The position numbers and the translations under genes were made by a program. Positions 44,131 through 53,183 of a DNA stretch of 64,000 nt are shown here, piece by piece (the stretch's first letter is position 1; each line of letters opens with the position of its first letter). Origin of the DNA: Calcarisporiella thermophila CBS 279.70 (taxonomy: Eukaryota; Fungi; Calcarisporiellomycota); the NCBI RefSeq assembly GCF_041956535.1, contig NW_027192232.1, positions 1 to 64,000 of the forward strand, given 5' to 3'. The notes under the pieces were generated by a model, which was not told the origin of the DNA, did not search any database, and worked only from the letters and a program-made list of their open reading frames with translations.

Positions 44131-44487
44131 TCAACGAGGCACTAAGCATTCACCGCCCAAATATTCGCCACTCAGCTCGAACGTAAACTCTCCATCTCGA
44201 GTCACGACGGGGAACTCGTTGAGACAAAGAGGGATCTTACGCTTCTTGAACGACCCTTTACCTCGCTTTTCTAACGGCGTATGACTGAAAGTCAGTCCGT
44301 TAACGCTGACGCATGAATCACCAAAGGACGCCGCCCCCTTTACATGATAGGTGCCATGTCCCGATACTGGGACTAAGATCGGCTTACATAGGGACGCCGT
44401 TGAGCTTATTACGTCTGGAGAATCCCGCTTTTCCAGGGGGAAAGCGAAGGTGAGGCCAGCGAAAAGAGAGAAAATGGCCAGACGCAT
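44131..44487 (-). CDS. Small secreted pro-protein SSP1 of a two-repeat Cys family (118 aa)
   Basis: Signal peptide; PLEKR occurs twice plus KKR; repeats C-x24-C and C-x25-C; TATAAAA at 44571-44577; homologous to SSP2 and SSP3. Confidence 0.85.
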   Translation of the reverse strand: MRLAIFSLFAGLTFAFPLEKRDSPDVISSTASLCKPILVPVSGHGTYHVKGAASFGDSCVSVNGLTFSHTPLEKRGKGSFKKRKIPLCLNEFPVVTRDGEFTFELSGEYLGGECLVPR

Positions 44488-45384
44488 GCTGTCGTATACT
44501 AATGGAATTATAGGTTTGGACTATGGGAGTATATTCGGTGAAGTAACGATCGAGTTTCAATTGTTTTTCTTTTTATACTCGCCTTATAGTTGGACTATCG
44601 CTTCGGACTAGGGCATCTAGCAAAATGTGCCATGGCTGGCAAATACCTTCAGAGGGGTAATTTTACAAACAACATGGTAGCAAATTTGATGGGATAATTT
44701 CAGATCTTACCCTTGAATGCAGCGATCAGCGCTAGATTATCCGAAACTTATTTTGGAACCGAGAGTAATTCACCCTGGAATATGCGCATATGGACGCCTG
44801 CAAATTATTTTAGCTCCATCTACTATTTTCAACGGTTCATCTCATCGAGATTCAACTCTAAGCTCATTTCTCGTCGCAATTTGTTTGCTATTAGCCCATG
44901 GGTTGAATTATCAATTTTTGCTTAGCCTGCAATCACTGGTACCGATCCAGGTTGCACGGATCAGTGAATTTCCTATGTCAGAAGGAAAACTTGCAATCTT
45001 GAAAGTACTAGACCATATCAGTAGGATGAGAGAAAAGGCCGCACTCATCTAGTATCACTAGCCACTACTTAAGCACGCACAAACGTGTAATTCAACCTTA
45101 GACTATATTGTTTTTTTAACCCGAAAATAAGGTAATCAGCAATAAGATTATCGAAAGTTTTGGATTTAGTTAGAGTCAAAGAGGGGAAGTGGGATAAATA
45201 AAAATGTGGCACCAATAAACTAACAAAATTTAGCAAACTAAATTGTCAAAACAGACAATTTGAGAAGAATACATAGGCTCTTTATTTAATGAGCGATTGT
45301 AACCAAATATATCGTAAAATACTTATCGATTCTTATTTCATTGTCAAATGATCACATTAAAATGATAATATGATCAGTTGGAAC

Positions 45385-46002
45385 TTATCGAACATGCGTT
45401 AACTTAGAACGGAGTGGACGCAGGCAATCCTCATTCCGATACTTGGCTAGGATTGAAAAGTCATACGTGCCAACTTTATCCATTGCAGGGAAGCTATCGG
45501 CACAAAGCGAGATTTCGGATTTCGAATTTTTATCGGCTCGTATAGGCATGGGAGGGGGAGGGACAGCGATAGTTTCGTAAACTATTTCTTCAACATAGGG
45601 AGTGGAAGTAGTACATCTACCGGTGGTGTCGGGATATATGGTTATAGGGCGAGGCGTAATGGGCGATATCGTAGGGGTCAAGATAGGAGGAGGAATAGGA
45701 GGAGGAGGGGGGCCCCATTGATACCAAGTTGTGGTGGTCACCGAAGTCCTTGCGGGAGACATAACAATAAAGTAGTTTTGCACGGACACACAATTCCCGT
45801 CATAATACGCTGTACCGCGGATTTTAAACTGCCCATTTTTCGGGACGCTTAAACGAACTGGTGAACACAAATGAACCCTACGGGAATCTCCAGTAGTCAG
45901 AAATCCGACTCTGGGATCGTTACTAGTGTCTACCGCAGGGCGAGGTAAATAGAAAGCAAGAGTAAAATGTAAAAAGGCCAAAAGACAGAAGGTGCGATAC
46001 AT
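45385..46002 (-). CDS. Secreted protein SSP2 of the same family, with Pro/Thr-rich linker (205 aa)
   Basis: Signal peptide; LCSPVRLSVPKNGQFKIRGTAYYDGNCVSV and LCADSFPAMDKVGTYDFSILAKYRNEDCL repeats; TATATAA at 46072-46078. Confidence 0.85.
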   Translation of the reverse strand: MYRTFCLLAFLHFTLAFYLPRPAVDTSNDPRVGFLTTGDSRRVHLCSPVRLSVPKNGQFKIRGTAYYDGNCVSVQNYFIVMSPARTSVTTTTWYQWGPPPPPIPPPILTPTISPITPRPITIYPDTTGRCTTSTPYVEEIVYETIAVPPPPMPIRADKNSKSEISLCADSFPAMDKVGTYDFSILAKYRNEDCLRPLRSKLTHVR

Positions 46003-46203
46003 GATTCCAAATAACCAATGGCACTAGAGAAAAAAAATGCCTCAAAGACTCGGTCCAGATTCCGCGCATCCTTATATACTAGAGCACACCTTAAGTTAAC
46101 TGGGGTTCAATAGGGCGCTGAAATGGCTAACACTGCTCTTCACACATAAATAAGCCTTCTTTGATTAAGATTCGATTTGAACCTCGAACAATTTCGATGT
46201 TCA

Positions 46204-50346: not shown

Positions 50347-51540
50347 ATGAACCCCATTGACGCCGTGGTCCAGCTTCCACTTGAAGAGCGTTCCCAATAC
50401 ACCGCTGCCCTTCGCTACTTCCTCTCCACAGCCCCGGGCGCTTGCTCCGCCACGGCGCCCTATCAAACCTTCAAACTCCCCACGGGGGACAAGATCACTT
50501 GCGTTTTCCACAACGATATACCTTTTGTTTCGGCGCCCGACATCTTGCGTATACTGTACTGTCGCTTTGCGCTTCTGGGACGGCAAGTGATAGACCTGCG
50601 GAAATTCGAGGAGGGCATCCAAAGCGATCTGCGCCACCTTCAGGTGGGTCTGTCCGCGACTCTCGAGGAAACAAGGTCGCCGCTCCTCCAACTTCTGCAC
50701 TGCAAGGGGAGTATAAAAACGCTCAAGAGGCAGAAGGTCTATTTCTGGTTCGCAGTGCCGTATGACAGGCTGTTCCTGGACGCGCTGGAGAGGGATATCC
50801 GGCGAGAGAGGAGAGGGATGGCCACAACCAGCATTGCCTTGGCTGAGCCCGCAACCCGCGTGAGCATGGACCGAACCGACGCCCGATTTTTCGAGCTGAG
50901 AAAGGAGCTGCTGGGCGACGAGGGCGCCTCCCATTTAGCCGGCGTGGCGGAGGGGGAGTCGTTTTTGGAGCAGCTAGAGGAGGCGAAATCGGCCACCGCG
51001 TTTTCCCTTTCGCCGACCTCGACCGTTACCCACGAGGACGAGAGGGAGAATCCCGCCCTCTCGTTCAAAGATACTCTCCCGGACCTCTCTCCCACCACCT
51101 CGGACTATAACCCGGCCGTTTGCTCGTTTGACAAGCGGGCCTCATCCCTTATGTTTTCCCCCATGGATTATTTTTCGCCCCTAATACCCTCGCTGCCCAT
51201 CCTCCAACCCGAATCCCCCGAAAAACTCTCCGAGCCGCCGCTACCAACCCACGACCGCCCGCACGTCTGCCCCCACGAGGGATGCAGAAAGGCCTTCAAG
51301 CGGCTGCAGCACTACAAGCGCCACCAGCGCACCCACACCAACCTCCGCCCATTCGTGTGCGAGACATGCGGGAGAGCGTTCGCCCGCTCCGACAGCCTAA
51401 CCGTCCACCAGCGGACGCATCAACGCAATAGCCTTCAGCCGAAGCAGGGCCATTTGGTGAATGCGCATGGTAACAAGCAGCCGATGGCGGGGGCCACGGA
51501 GCAGGAGTCCTTTGGAAATGTACAACTAATAAATTATTAA
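50347..51540 (+). CDS. STE12: STE12/SteA-type transcription factor (STE domain + two C2H2 fingers), divergent, intronless
   Basis: LRYFLSTAP, KFEEGIQSDLRHL, KTLKRQKVYFWFAVPYDRLFLDALERD; CPHEGCRKAFKRLQHYKRHQRTH and CETCGRAFARSDSLTVHQRTH. Confidence 0.92.
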   Translation: MNPIDAVVQLPLEERSQYTAALRYFLSTAPGACSATAPYQTFKLPTGDKITCVFHNDIPFVSAPDILRILYCRFALLGRQVIDLRKFEEGIQSDLRHLQVGLSATLEETRSPLLQLLHCKGSIKTLKRQKVYFWFAVPYDRLFLDALERDIRRERRGMATTSIALAEPATRVSMDRTDARFFELRKELLGDEGASHLAGVAEGESFLEQLEEAKSATAFSLSPTSTVTHEDERENPALSFKDTLPDLSPTTSDYNPAVCSFDKRASSLMFSPMDYFSPLIPSLPILQPESPEKLSEPPLPTHDRPHVCPHEGCRKAFKRLQHYKRHQRTHTNLRPFVCETCGRAFARSDSLTVHQRTHQRNSLQPKQGHLVNAHGNKQPMAGATEQESFGNVQLINY

Positions 51541-51679
51541 GAAGAAGTTGATTTTATTCATTCTACAAGAATTCAGAAGTAGAAGATAGTTAGATGAGAG
51601 AAAAGAGAGGAAGAAATGTAAGAAAAGTGCTGCCGAAATAAAAATCCAGAAAGAGTTAGCGGCCTCTGGCGCCCGGCCC

Positions 51680-53183
51680 TTACTTCCAGAGCTTCTTCAG
51701 TGACAAGCTCTGCTGGTCGTCCTTCTTCATCACCTTGGCGACGGCCATTTCGAAGTCTTCTTGGGTCACGTGCACCCTCCGTTCCCGAAGTGCATACATT
51801 CCGGCCTCGGTGCACACGCCCTTGACCTCTGCACCGCTGGAGCCCGTCATTTTCTCTGCGACCTTGCGCAGATTGATGCCGCGGGTCAAGTTCATTTTGC
51901 GTGAGTGGATCTTAAGAATGTCGGCACGGGCTGCCTCGTTCGGCGGCGGGAATTCAATCTTGCGGTCAATACGTCCCGGGCGAAGAAGAGCAGGATCAAG
52001 AATGTCAATGCGATTTGTGGCCATGATCACCTTGATGTTTTTGGACGGCTCGAACCCATCAAGCTGGTTCAGAAGCTCAAGCATGGTTCGCTGCACCTCT
52101 GAATCGCCTCCTCCGGATCCGCTTTCAATGCGCGACGATCCAATAGAGTCAATTTCGTCCATAAAAATGATCGATGGGGCATGCTCTCTGAAAGAGGAGA
52201 AATCAGTAAGCATTGTGGCCATGGAAGAGTCATTGCGAAACGTTCAGATGCAATAGAATGGGCGAGGCCTTACCTGGCCATAACGAACAACTCACGAACC
52301 ATTCTGGAGCCCTCACCAATATACTTTTGCACTAGTTCCGATCCTGATACACGGATGAACTTGCAGTCGGTGTGGTGTGCAACAGCACGAGCAAGAAGCG
52401 TCTTTCCGGTGCCGGGGGGACCGTATAAAAGTACACCCTTAAGTTTCCAGCAACCATTGTCCGTTAATACTCTCAAGCAACTTCAGTTAATTGCAAAATC
52501 ATGTATCATTACCTTTGGCTGTGCAATTCCCAAGCTCTCAAAAAGCTCTGGATGTTTAACTGGTAGCTCAATAACTTCCTTGATCTCCTTGATTTGTTTA
52601 TCCAAACCGCCGATCATATCATATGTGGAGTCGGGCACTTTCTCAACCATCATGAGCGAGACGAGGGGATCGACCTTGTTAGGGAGGATTTTGTGCAATG
52701 TATAGGAGTCATTTCGGAGAGCCACACGAACAGAGGGGGTGAGTGCAGCGGTATCGATGTCAGGCGAGATATCGACAACGTATTTACCCTCGGGATGCAC
52801 CTGAGGATTGCAATCAGGAGGTGTGATTAGCAAGCATTAGAGGGAGGGACGCAAAACATGGGATGGGAGTTGGTAAAAAAATCCAGAATTTACCTTGACC
52901 AACACTTTGTTCTTGCTCATGACTTTGACCACTTCTCCCACATAAGAACCGGGCTCTTGTAGCAGTTGAAGCTCTTCTCTTAACAAGCGCACTGATGAAT
53001 CAAATGCATTTTTGTTAGGAGATTTGCACTTGGATCTGAATTGGCAGCTGATTTCTTACCTTTAGCGTTGAGTGCATTTCTCTGGGCTTCAAGACGCCGC
53101 AGATTCTGAGTCTTCTCGTTGATCGTCGTTTCATATTCTTCGATCTTCGCCTGGTAAAATGTTCGGATGCCTTCTTTCCCCAT
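51680..53183 (-). CDS. RPT6: 26S proteasome AAA-ATPase Rpt6 (Sug1)
   Basis: [64 protein letters not shown]-terminal KKLWK. Confidence 0.97.

What the first reader, a model, noticed from the sequence alone, without database searches (positions are those of the whole stretch)
44131..53183. Candidate undescribed peptide-ligand/receptor (proto mating-type) locus: SSP1-SSP2-STE3-SSP3-STE12-RPT6
Seen: a STE3 receptor flanked on both sides by three paralogous secreted pro-proteins, sharing a divergent promoter with SSP3 and followed by STE12. Established: basidiomycete P/R loci place STE3 next to its pheromone precursors, and STE12 is MAT-linked in Cryptococcus. Known STE3 ligands are prenylated CaaX peptides without signal peptides, and Mucorales mating uses trisporoids. 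Here the positions where pheromone genes would be expected hold signal-peptide, Cys-paired proteins, two with Kex2-type sites. Inference: a non-Dikarya recognition system (mating, self/non-self or host sensing) in which these proteins are ligands, ligand carriers or co-regulated effectors.
Basis: partly seen in the sequence, partly recalled or inferred. Interest (0 to 1): 0.92.

Follow-up and report, generated by a model that had tools for sequence, protein, structure and literature searches.

The report
Pheromone receptor amid orphan secreted proteins
In the early-diverging fungus Calcarisporiella thermophila, the only pheromone-receptor gene sits among three related secreted proteins found nowhere else and next to a mating-pathway regulator; the layout recalls mushroom mating loci, but nothing yet shows that these proteins are the receptor's signal.

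Summary
The layout is real. The genome is Calcarisporiella thermophila (Mucoromycota). Its only STE3 gene (two exons, seven helices, about 361 aa) lies among the only three members of an orphan secreted family, 2.8 kb from an STE12-type gene. The secreted proteins are two Cys-bracketed beta repeats with a variable linker; no homologue or fold match was found. No CaaX pheromone gene lies nearby.

The 'proto mating-type locus' reading is weakened. This STE12 is one of nine lineage-specific paralogues, not shown orthologous to MAT-linked STE12. STE12 neighbourhoods elsewhere show no STE3 or RPT6. Kex2 sites are not conserved. The proteins look like folded disulfide domains, not peptide precursors. 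A rival HMG plus HD1-like locus exists on another contig.

Best reading (0.38): a co-regulated receptor/regulator/secreted-output module, with the secreted proteins as induced effectors. Passenger or chance: 0.42 together. Direct ligands: 0.12. The scan noted only this same stretch before, not other DNA.

The parts
44131..44487 (-). SSP1, 118 aa: signal peptide, KR at 20-21, two Cys-bracketed beta repeats (C34-C59, C88-C114), basic linker with two more KR sites
45385..46002 (-). SSP2, 205 aa: same two repeats with a Pro/Thr-rich linker of about 90 aa; the public protein set holds only a 125-aa form starting at an internal Met
46203..46210 (+). ATGAAACA, match to the STE12 pheromone response element, 200 bp upstream of SSP2
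   Evidence: function inferred
46433..46986 (-). STE3 exon 2: helices 6-7 and a C-terminal tail of about 80 aa
46987..47058 (-). STE3 intron, most likely 72 nt (361-aa product); alternative donors at 47022 and 47073 also keep the frame
   Evidence: not confirmed by RNA
47059..47590 (-). STE3 exon 1: helices 1-5
47591..48453 (.). Divergent STE3/SSP3 promoter, TATA-like boxes on both sides
48050..48057 (-). Second ATGAAACA, mid-way in the divergent promoter
   Evidence: function inferred
48454..48837 (+). SSP3, 127 aa: same two repeats, one KR at 80-81 in the linker; inverted relative to SSP1 and SSP2
50347..51540 (+). Intronless, fast-evolving STE12-type gene (STE domain plus two C2H2 fingers), one of nine paralogues
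51680..53183 (-). RPT6 (26S proteasome subunit 8); housekeeping neighbour, probably only the border of the cluster

Best explanation
A lineage-specific signalling module built round the genome's only STE3. Shown: an intact seven-helix STE3, three locally duplicated secreted beta proteins, an STE12 paralogue, and two ATGAAACA sites in their promoters. Inferred from the yeast and basidiomycete pathway: STE3 senses a hydrophobic, probably prenylated signal encoded elsewhere or not yet found, and signals through G-beta-gamma and a MAPK cascade to STE12-family factors. These bind the two elements and induce STE3 itself and the SSP genes. The SSPs go through the ER and Golgi, are trimmed by Kex2 in the pro-region or linker without falling apart, and act outside the cell as folded disulfide-locked effectors of the recognition response (wall or adhesion proteins, or carriers). 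They are not the receptor's ligand. One inversion of the SSP3-STE3 block in an ancestral SSP1-SSP2-SSP3 tandem array would explain the two-sided flanking.
For: Single STE3 among the only three family members. STE12 paralogue within 2.8 kb, chance 0.2-0.6%. STE3 and STE12 belong to the inferred ancestral P/R core of Cryptococcus and Kwoniella (PMC12510652). ATGAAACA twice in 2.19 kb of promoter against 0.12-0.16 expected, P about 0.01; for the 7-mer P 0.05-0.09. Head-to-head STE3/SSP3 promoter. Two separate AF2 runs give compact beta models, pLDDT 76 and 80. Cys and Gly are invariant in all six repeats, while the dibasic sites vary.
Against: No expression data. The motif test was chosen after seeing the sites, and the binding site of Mucoromycota STE12 is not established. 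The neighbouring STE12 has lost 14 of 65 otherwise invariant positions, some in the presumed recognition segment, so it may not bind this element. SSP1's promoter has no full element. No conserved synteny was found. Small secreted orphans are common in this genome: 13 crude calls in 244 kb.
Confidence: 0.38

Rival explanations
1. The STE3-STE12 linkage is real (selected, or a remnant of an old receptor-regulator cluster), but the SSP array is a passenger caught in a rearranging, AT-rich patch, as unrelated genes are caught in Cryptococcus MAT.
For: Inversions trap unrelated genes in P/R loci (PMC12510652). GC is 32-43% over 43-50 kb against 45-55% around it. SSP3 is inverted. Both STE3 (no single-sequence hit) and STE12 (longest branch) evolve fast.
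Against: The element-like sites lie in SSP promoters. All three family members hug STE3. The STE12 copy appears younger than the split from other fungi.
Confidence: 0.22
2. Chance neighbourhood. A tandem family of orphan secreted proteins (antimicrobial, wall or two-chain killer-toxin-like) expanded in a fast-evolving patch where the single non-mating STE3 and one of nine STE12 copies happen to lie.
For: Nine STE12 paralogues and at least 14 copies of the neighbouring Zn-cluster family. Other small secreted genes lie on this contig and beside other regulators. No STE3 or RPT6 lies beside STE12 in other fungi. The window was picked from very many.
Against: It needs two unlikely adjacencies at once, one of them the STE3-STE12 pairing known from basidiomycetes, plus the promoter elements.
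Confidence: 0.2
3. The SSPs, or peptides cut from them by Kex2, are the ligands of this STE3: a non-prenylated peptide or small-protein recognition system, possibly allelic and mating-type-like.
For: They occupy the places of pheromone genes. No CaaX gene lies within 41-56 kb. Multiple ligand paralogues beside STE3 are typical of Cryptococcus. The ligand of the single glomeromycete STE3 was not found (PMC3834313). The short C-tail resembles mating-type STE3 (criterion in PMC13308352). Linker cleavage in SSP1 and SSP3 would give a two-chain, hormone-like product if the disulfides cross the repeats.
Against: Characterised STE3 peptide ligands are lipidated CaaX peptides. No conserved excisable peptide exists. 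A receptor encoded beside its own ligand would self-activate unless alleles differ. A CaaX gene elsewhere in the genome was not excluded. The genome has five carotenoid oxygenase loci and an HMG plus HD1-like locus as other routes to mating control.
Confidence: 0.12
4. A decaying remnant: the receptor and the STE12 copy are drifting under relaxed selection in a fungus with no known sexual stage.
For: Very long branches; 14 of 65 invariant STE positions changed. That no sexual stage is known is my recollection, not tested.
Against: All frames are intact, seven helices and all Cys are kept, and two other paralogues have lost more positions.
Confidence: 0.08

Closest known systems
Tremellomycete P/R locus (MF, STE3, STE12, STE20; Cryptococcus, Kwoniella; PMC12510652)
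   Same: STE3 next to an STE12 with C2H2 fingers; several small paralogous genes around the receptor in both orientations; signs of inversion.
   Different: No CaaX pheromone gene; no STE20-like gene seen in the ORFs of the contig; the small genes code for signal-peptide, disulfide beta proteins; the STE12 is a species-specific paralogue; no alleles known.
Single STE3 of Glomeromycotina (PMC3834313) and non-mating STE3-like receptors (PMC13308352)
   Same: Single-copy STE3 without a recognisable pheromone gene nearby.
   Different: Short C-tail here; embedded in a secreted-protein array and linked to STE12, which STE12 of Rhizophagus clarus, Paraglomus and Diversispora are not within up to 10 kb.
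Mucorales sex locus (agl/tptA/sexM or sexP/rnhA; PMC7928374)
   Same: Same phylum; the genome holds many HMG genes and carotenoid oxygenases.
   Different: No HMG gene on this contig; no HMG next to a TPT, alginate lyase or AAA_12 helicase anywhere in the genome.
Kex2-processed secreted precursors (alpha-factor, KEPs, two-chain killer toxins; PMC6339444)
   Same: Signal peptide, internal repeat, dibasic sites in two of three members.
   Different: Only two repeats at 20-50% identity, each part of a folded domain; cleavage sites not conserved; no sequence or fold match to any known protein.
Pneumocystis ste3 cluster
   Same: STE3 in a cluster once read as MAT-like.
   Different: Its 'ste12' proved to be a truncated ste11 and the region is not the MAT locus (PMC4313921), so it is a cautionary precedent rather than support.

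Membership tests
STE3 receptor (PF02076) | Pfam STE3 domain over the curated cut-off | tested here: met
   80 and 33 bits on the two exons, cut-off 29.2; language-model neighbours are all STE3
STE3 receptor (PF02076) | Seven transmembrane helices in an intact frame | tested here: met
   five plus two hydrophobic peaks; in-frame intron
STE3 receptor (PF02076) | Activation by a prenylated peptide and G-protein coupling | not testable with these tools
   needs a reporter assay
Basidiomycete-type P/R mating locus | STE3 gene | tested here: met
Basidiomycete-type P/R mating locus | Adjacent CaaX pheromone precursor gene | tested here: not met
   six-frame scan: the only strict CaaX in 41-56 kb is the Ras-family GTPase; one 11-codon ORF ending CAYL is too short
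Basidiomycete-type P/R mating locus | Linked STE12 and STE20 (tremellomycete core) | tested here: inconclusive
   STE12 is linked but is a species-specific paralogue (no basidiomycete sequence in the tree); no STE20-like ORF seen on most of the contig, not searched with a profile
Basidiomycete-type P/R mating locus | Divergent alleles that segregate with mating type | not testable with these tools
Mucorales sex locus | HMG gene sexM or sexP flanked by tptA, rnhA or agl | tested here: not met
   no HMG match on contig C42; no such adjacency genome-wide
a-factor-type pheromone precursor (for the SSPs) | C-terminal CaaX, no signal peptide, under about 80 aa | tested here: not met
   signal peptides, 118-205 aa, no CaaX
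alpha-factor/KEP-type precursor (for the SSPs) | Three or more near-identical peptides separated by Kex2 sites | tested here: not met
   two divergent repeats; no dibasic site in the SSP2 linker (definition)
Known small secreted beta folds (ML/MD-2, cyanovirin, cerato-platanin, killer toxins) | Significant sequence or structural match | tested here: not met
   no Pfam or PDB sequence hit; best Foldseek E 0.09 and 0.13, best Z 3.2 and 4.4; the models rest on three sequences, so a missed match is possible

The most novel reading that the evidence does not exclude
The three orphan disulfide beta proteins, or Kex2-cut forms of them, are the ligands of a non-Dikarya STE3, and the locus is a receptor-ligand recognition locus that uses unlipidated secreted proteins in place of CaaX pheromones.
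Probability: 0.12. Interest if true: 0.9.

Novelty: new variant of a known kind. Interest (0 to 1): 0.5.

Why it matters
STE3 occurs outside Dikarya, but no ligand was found for it in the papers read (PMC3834313, PMC6339444). This compact locus names three concrete candidates for partners of such a receptor, in a culturable fungus, and a yeast reporter can test them. If they are ligands, STE3 chemistry is broader than prenylated peptides. If they are only co-regulated, it still shows a P/R-like receptor-STE12 cluster arising independently in Mucoromycota. The secreted family is itself new, with no fold match. If the layout is chance, only that last point remains.

Tried and rejected
1) A second, decayed STE3 at 49.5-49.95 kb: short shared words, but the local alignment score (186) is within shuffles (mean 182, maximum 225) and the words are out of order. 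Rejected.
2) Inversion-end repeats around SSP3-STE3: none above chance.
3) SSP homologues: none in 1.84 billion representatives beyond Pro-rich noise, the Atlas, PDB or metagenome contigs.
4) STE3 relatives exon by exon: none returned. The length limit of that tool makes this uninformative, so no STE3 tree or STE3-centred synteny was possible.
5) ML/MD-1 likeness of SSP1: top Foldseek rows but TM 0.2, not repeated with SSP3. Rejected.
6) Canonical sex locus: no HMG next to TPT, alginate lyase or AAA_12 helicase. The Pfam number taken from PMC7928374 for DUF2405 proved to be DUF2015, and its locus on C9 is ordinary.
7) Shared promoter words of 9 nt or more in three promoters: none.
9) The 2001 Pneumocystis paper is not held, so the claimed SUG1/RPT6 echo is unchecked.
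Full report
Source. The best hits of the STE12 protein are Calcarisporiella thermophila proteins, and one of them is 100% identical to a locus in the window's own genome. The window is contig C42 of the 28-Mb assembly of this Mucoromycota fungus; the strain with these locus tags is probably CBS 279.70 (PMC11393059).

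Observation. STE3 has two exons in one frame with a stop in the intron. Three donors keep the frame. The 72-nt intron, giving 361 aa, best fits my knowledge of the STE3 helix-5 region and is unconfirmed. Both exons pass the Pfam cut-off, the language-model neighbours are all STE3, and hydropathy gives seven helices. It is the only STE3 in the genome. Those searches returned nothing, which the tool's length limit makes uninformative.

The secreted family. SSP1-3 are about 31% identical and share four Cys. Each is two copies of a 36-residue unit, C-x10/11-G-x-aromatic...C, in which Cys, Gly and Cys are invariant over all six copies. The linker between the units is 28 to about 95 residues; it is basic in SSP1 and Pro/Thr-rich in SSP2. 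The family has exactly three members in the genome, all here. A profile search of 1.84 billion representatives found only the three proteins and Pro-rich noise. AlphaFold2 gave beta-rich models of SSP1 and SSP3 with the same strand order, pLDDT 76 and 80, with no significant match in PDB or the Atlas. The models rest on three sequences, so 'new fold' is not claimed. Dibasic sites are KR at 20, 74 and 82 in SSP1, KR at 80 in SSP3, and one RR at 41 in SSP2. No excisable peptide is conserved, so the selected unit is the folded domain.

Pheromone genes. A six-frame scan found no CaaX precursor in 41-56 kb other than the Ras-family GTPase. An 11-codon ORF ending CAYL in the STE3/SSP3 promoter is too short to credit. 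Spliced or distant precursors were not excluded, because the genome cannot be scanned as a file.

STE12. The genome has nine STE-domain genes. In a 52-row tree all nine fall on one side of a branch (100/99), and the window copy has the longest branch. With the other long branches removed it stays with two paralogues (100/99), and grouping it with ascomycete STE12 is rejected (AU p 0.0005). No basidiomycete sequence was available, and long-branch pull remains a caveat. It keeps 51 of 65 invariant positions. The link to STE3 is therefore most simply young, although the ancestral copy could have stayed here and diverged. STE12 of Rhizophagus clarus, Umbelopsis, Paraglomus, Diversispora and Fennellomyces has no STE3 or RPT6 within up to 10 kb. 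Twenty-three longer metagenome loci, all ascomycete-like, have no RPT6 or SSP match; STE3 detection there was weak. The sample is small and centred on STE12.

Is the cluster more than chance? One of nine STE12 copies within 3-10 kb of the single STE3 has probability 0.2-0.6%, and nearer 1% if any pathway gene would have counted (my estimate). Small secreted orphans are common, about 13 crude calls in 244 kb, and the region is AT-rich, which favours such neighbours. The two-sided flanking needs only one inversion of a tandem array (inference). Still, both adjacencies together are unlikely, and STE3-STE12 is a known pairing (PMC12510652). ATGAAACA occurs upstream of SSP2 and in the STE3/SSP3 promoter (P about 0.01 for the 8-mer, 0.05-0.09 for the 7-mer). 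That test was post hoc, and the site of Mucoromycota STE12 is not established (not found). I put non-random STE3-STE12 linkage at about 0.65 and a functional tie of the SSPs at about 0.5.

Mating type. There is no HMG gene on C42, and no HMG lies beside a TPT, alginate lyase or AAA_12 helicase, so the Mucorales layout (PMC7928374) is absent. On contig C1 an HMG gene and a TALE/HD1-like homeobox gene lie 3.3 kb apart in AT-rich DNA. This is a rival candidate, equally untested. Five carotenoid oxygenase loci leave apocarotenoid signalling open. The Pneumocystis ste3 cluster was once read the same way and turned out not to be MAT (PMC4313921). It did not name the stretch human-like; the DNA is fungal, and protein pieces from it were used in later searches.

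Mechanism and verdict. The most likely reading (0.38) is a receptor, regulator and secreted-output module in which STE12-family factors induce STE3 and the SSPs, and the SSPs act outside the cell as folded effectors. The anatomy is shown; signalling, regulation and effector role are inferred. Passenger (0.22), chance (0.20), direct ligand (0.12) and decay (0.08) are the rivals. It works like a P/R cluster in layout only and fails membership on the CaaX gene. Novelty: new variant of a known kind, with a new orphan protein family. Interest 0.5: real, odd and directly testable, but resting on one genome with no comparative or expression support.

Noticed in passing
G000:C1 about 613900-618300 (L014:7877-8749, L014:9289-9855, L015:1648-2328): HMG-box gene, 188-aa orphan and TALE/HD1-like homeobox gene together in AT-rich DNA; a candidate mating-type locus for this genome.
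   Followed up: partly
G000 genome-wide (C5, C13, C17, C18, C28, C31, C32, C35, C42): Nine STE12-type genes form one lineage-specific expansion; two have strongly altered recognition segments.
   Followed up: partly
window 9393-10949: DEP plus RGS gene (Sst2/FlbA type) on the same contig, 36 kb from STE3; copy number not checked.
   Followed up: partly
window 53389-54136: Ras-family GTPase ending CIIL, Ral-like by eye in its N-terminal motif; not tested further.
   Followed up: no
L012:5842-6084 and L012:7507-7770 (C42, about 70-72 kb): Two small related secreted peptide precursors with dibasic sites and a shared C-terminal segment, about 22 kb from STE3.
   Followed up: no
window 47905-47943 (minus): 11-codon ORF ending CAYL inside the STE3/SSP3 promoter, on a 10-nt tandem repeat; probably chance.
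   Followed up: partly
window 20291-20662: Orphan secreted protein of 123 aa with eight Cys and no Pfam match.
   Followed up: partly
window 40586-42342: Degenerate Zn-cluster factor of a family with at least 14 copies; a distant member also lies beside the sister STE12 paralogue on C18.
   Followed up: partly
window 55315-57000: Spliced gene with a velvet-like motif, judged by eye; the short piece tested gave no Pfam hit.
   Followed up: partly
L013:1991-2770: Ty3/gypsy gag-protease remnant near the end of contig C42.
   Followed up: no
L017:5248-5601: Orphan secreted 117-aa protein with four Cys near an HMG gene on C13, unrelated to the SSPs.
   Followed up: partly
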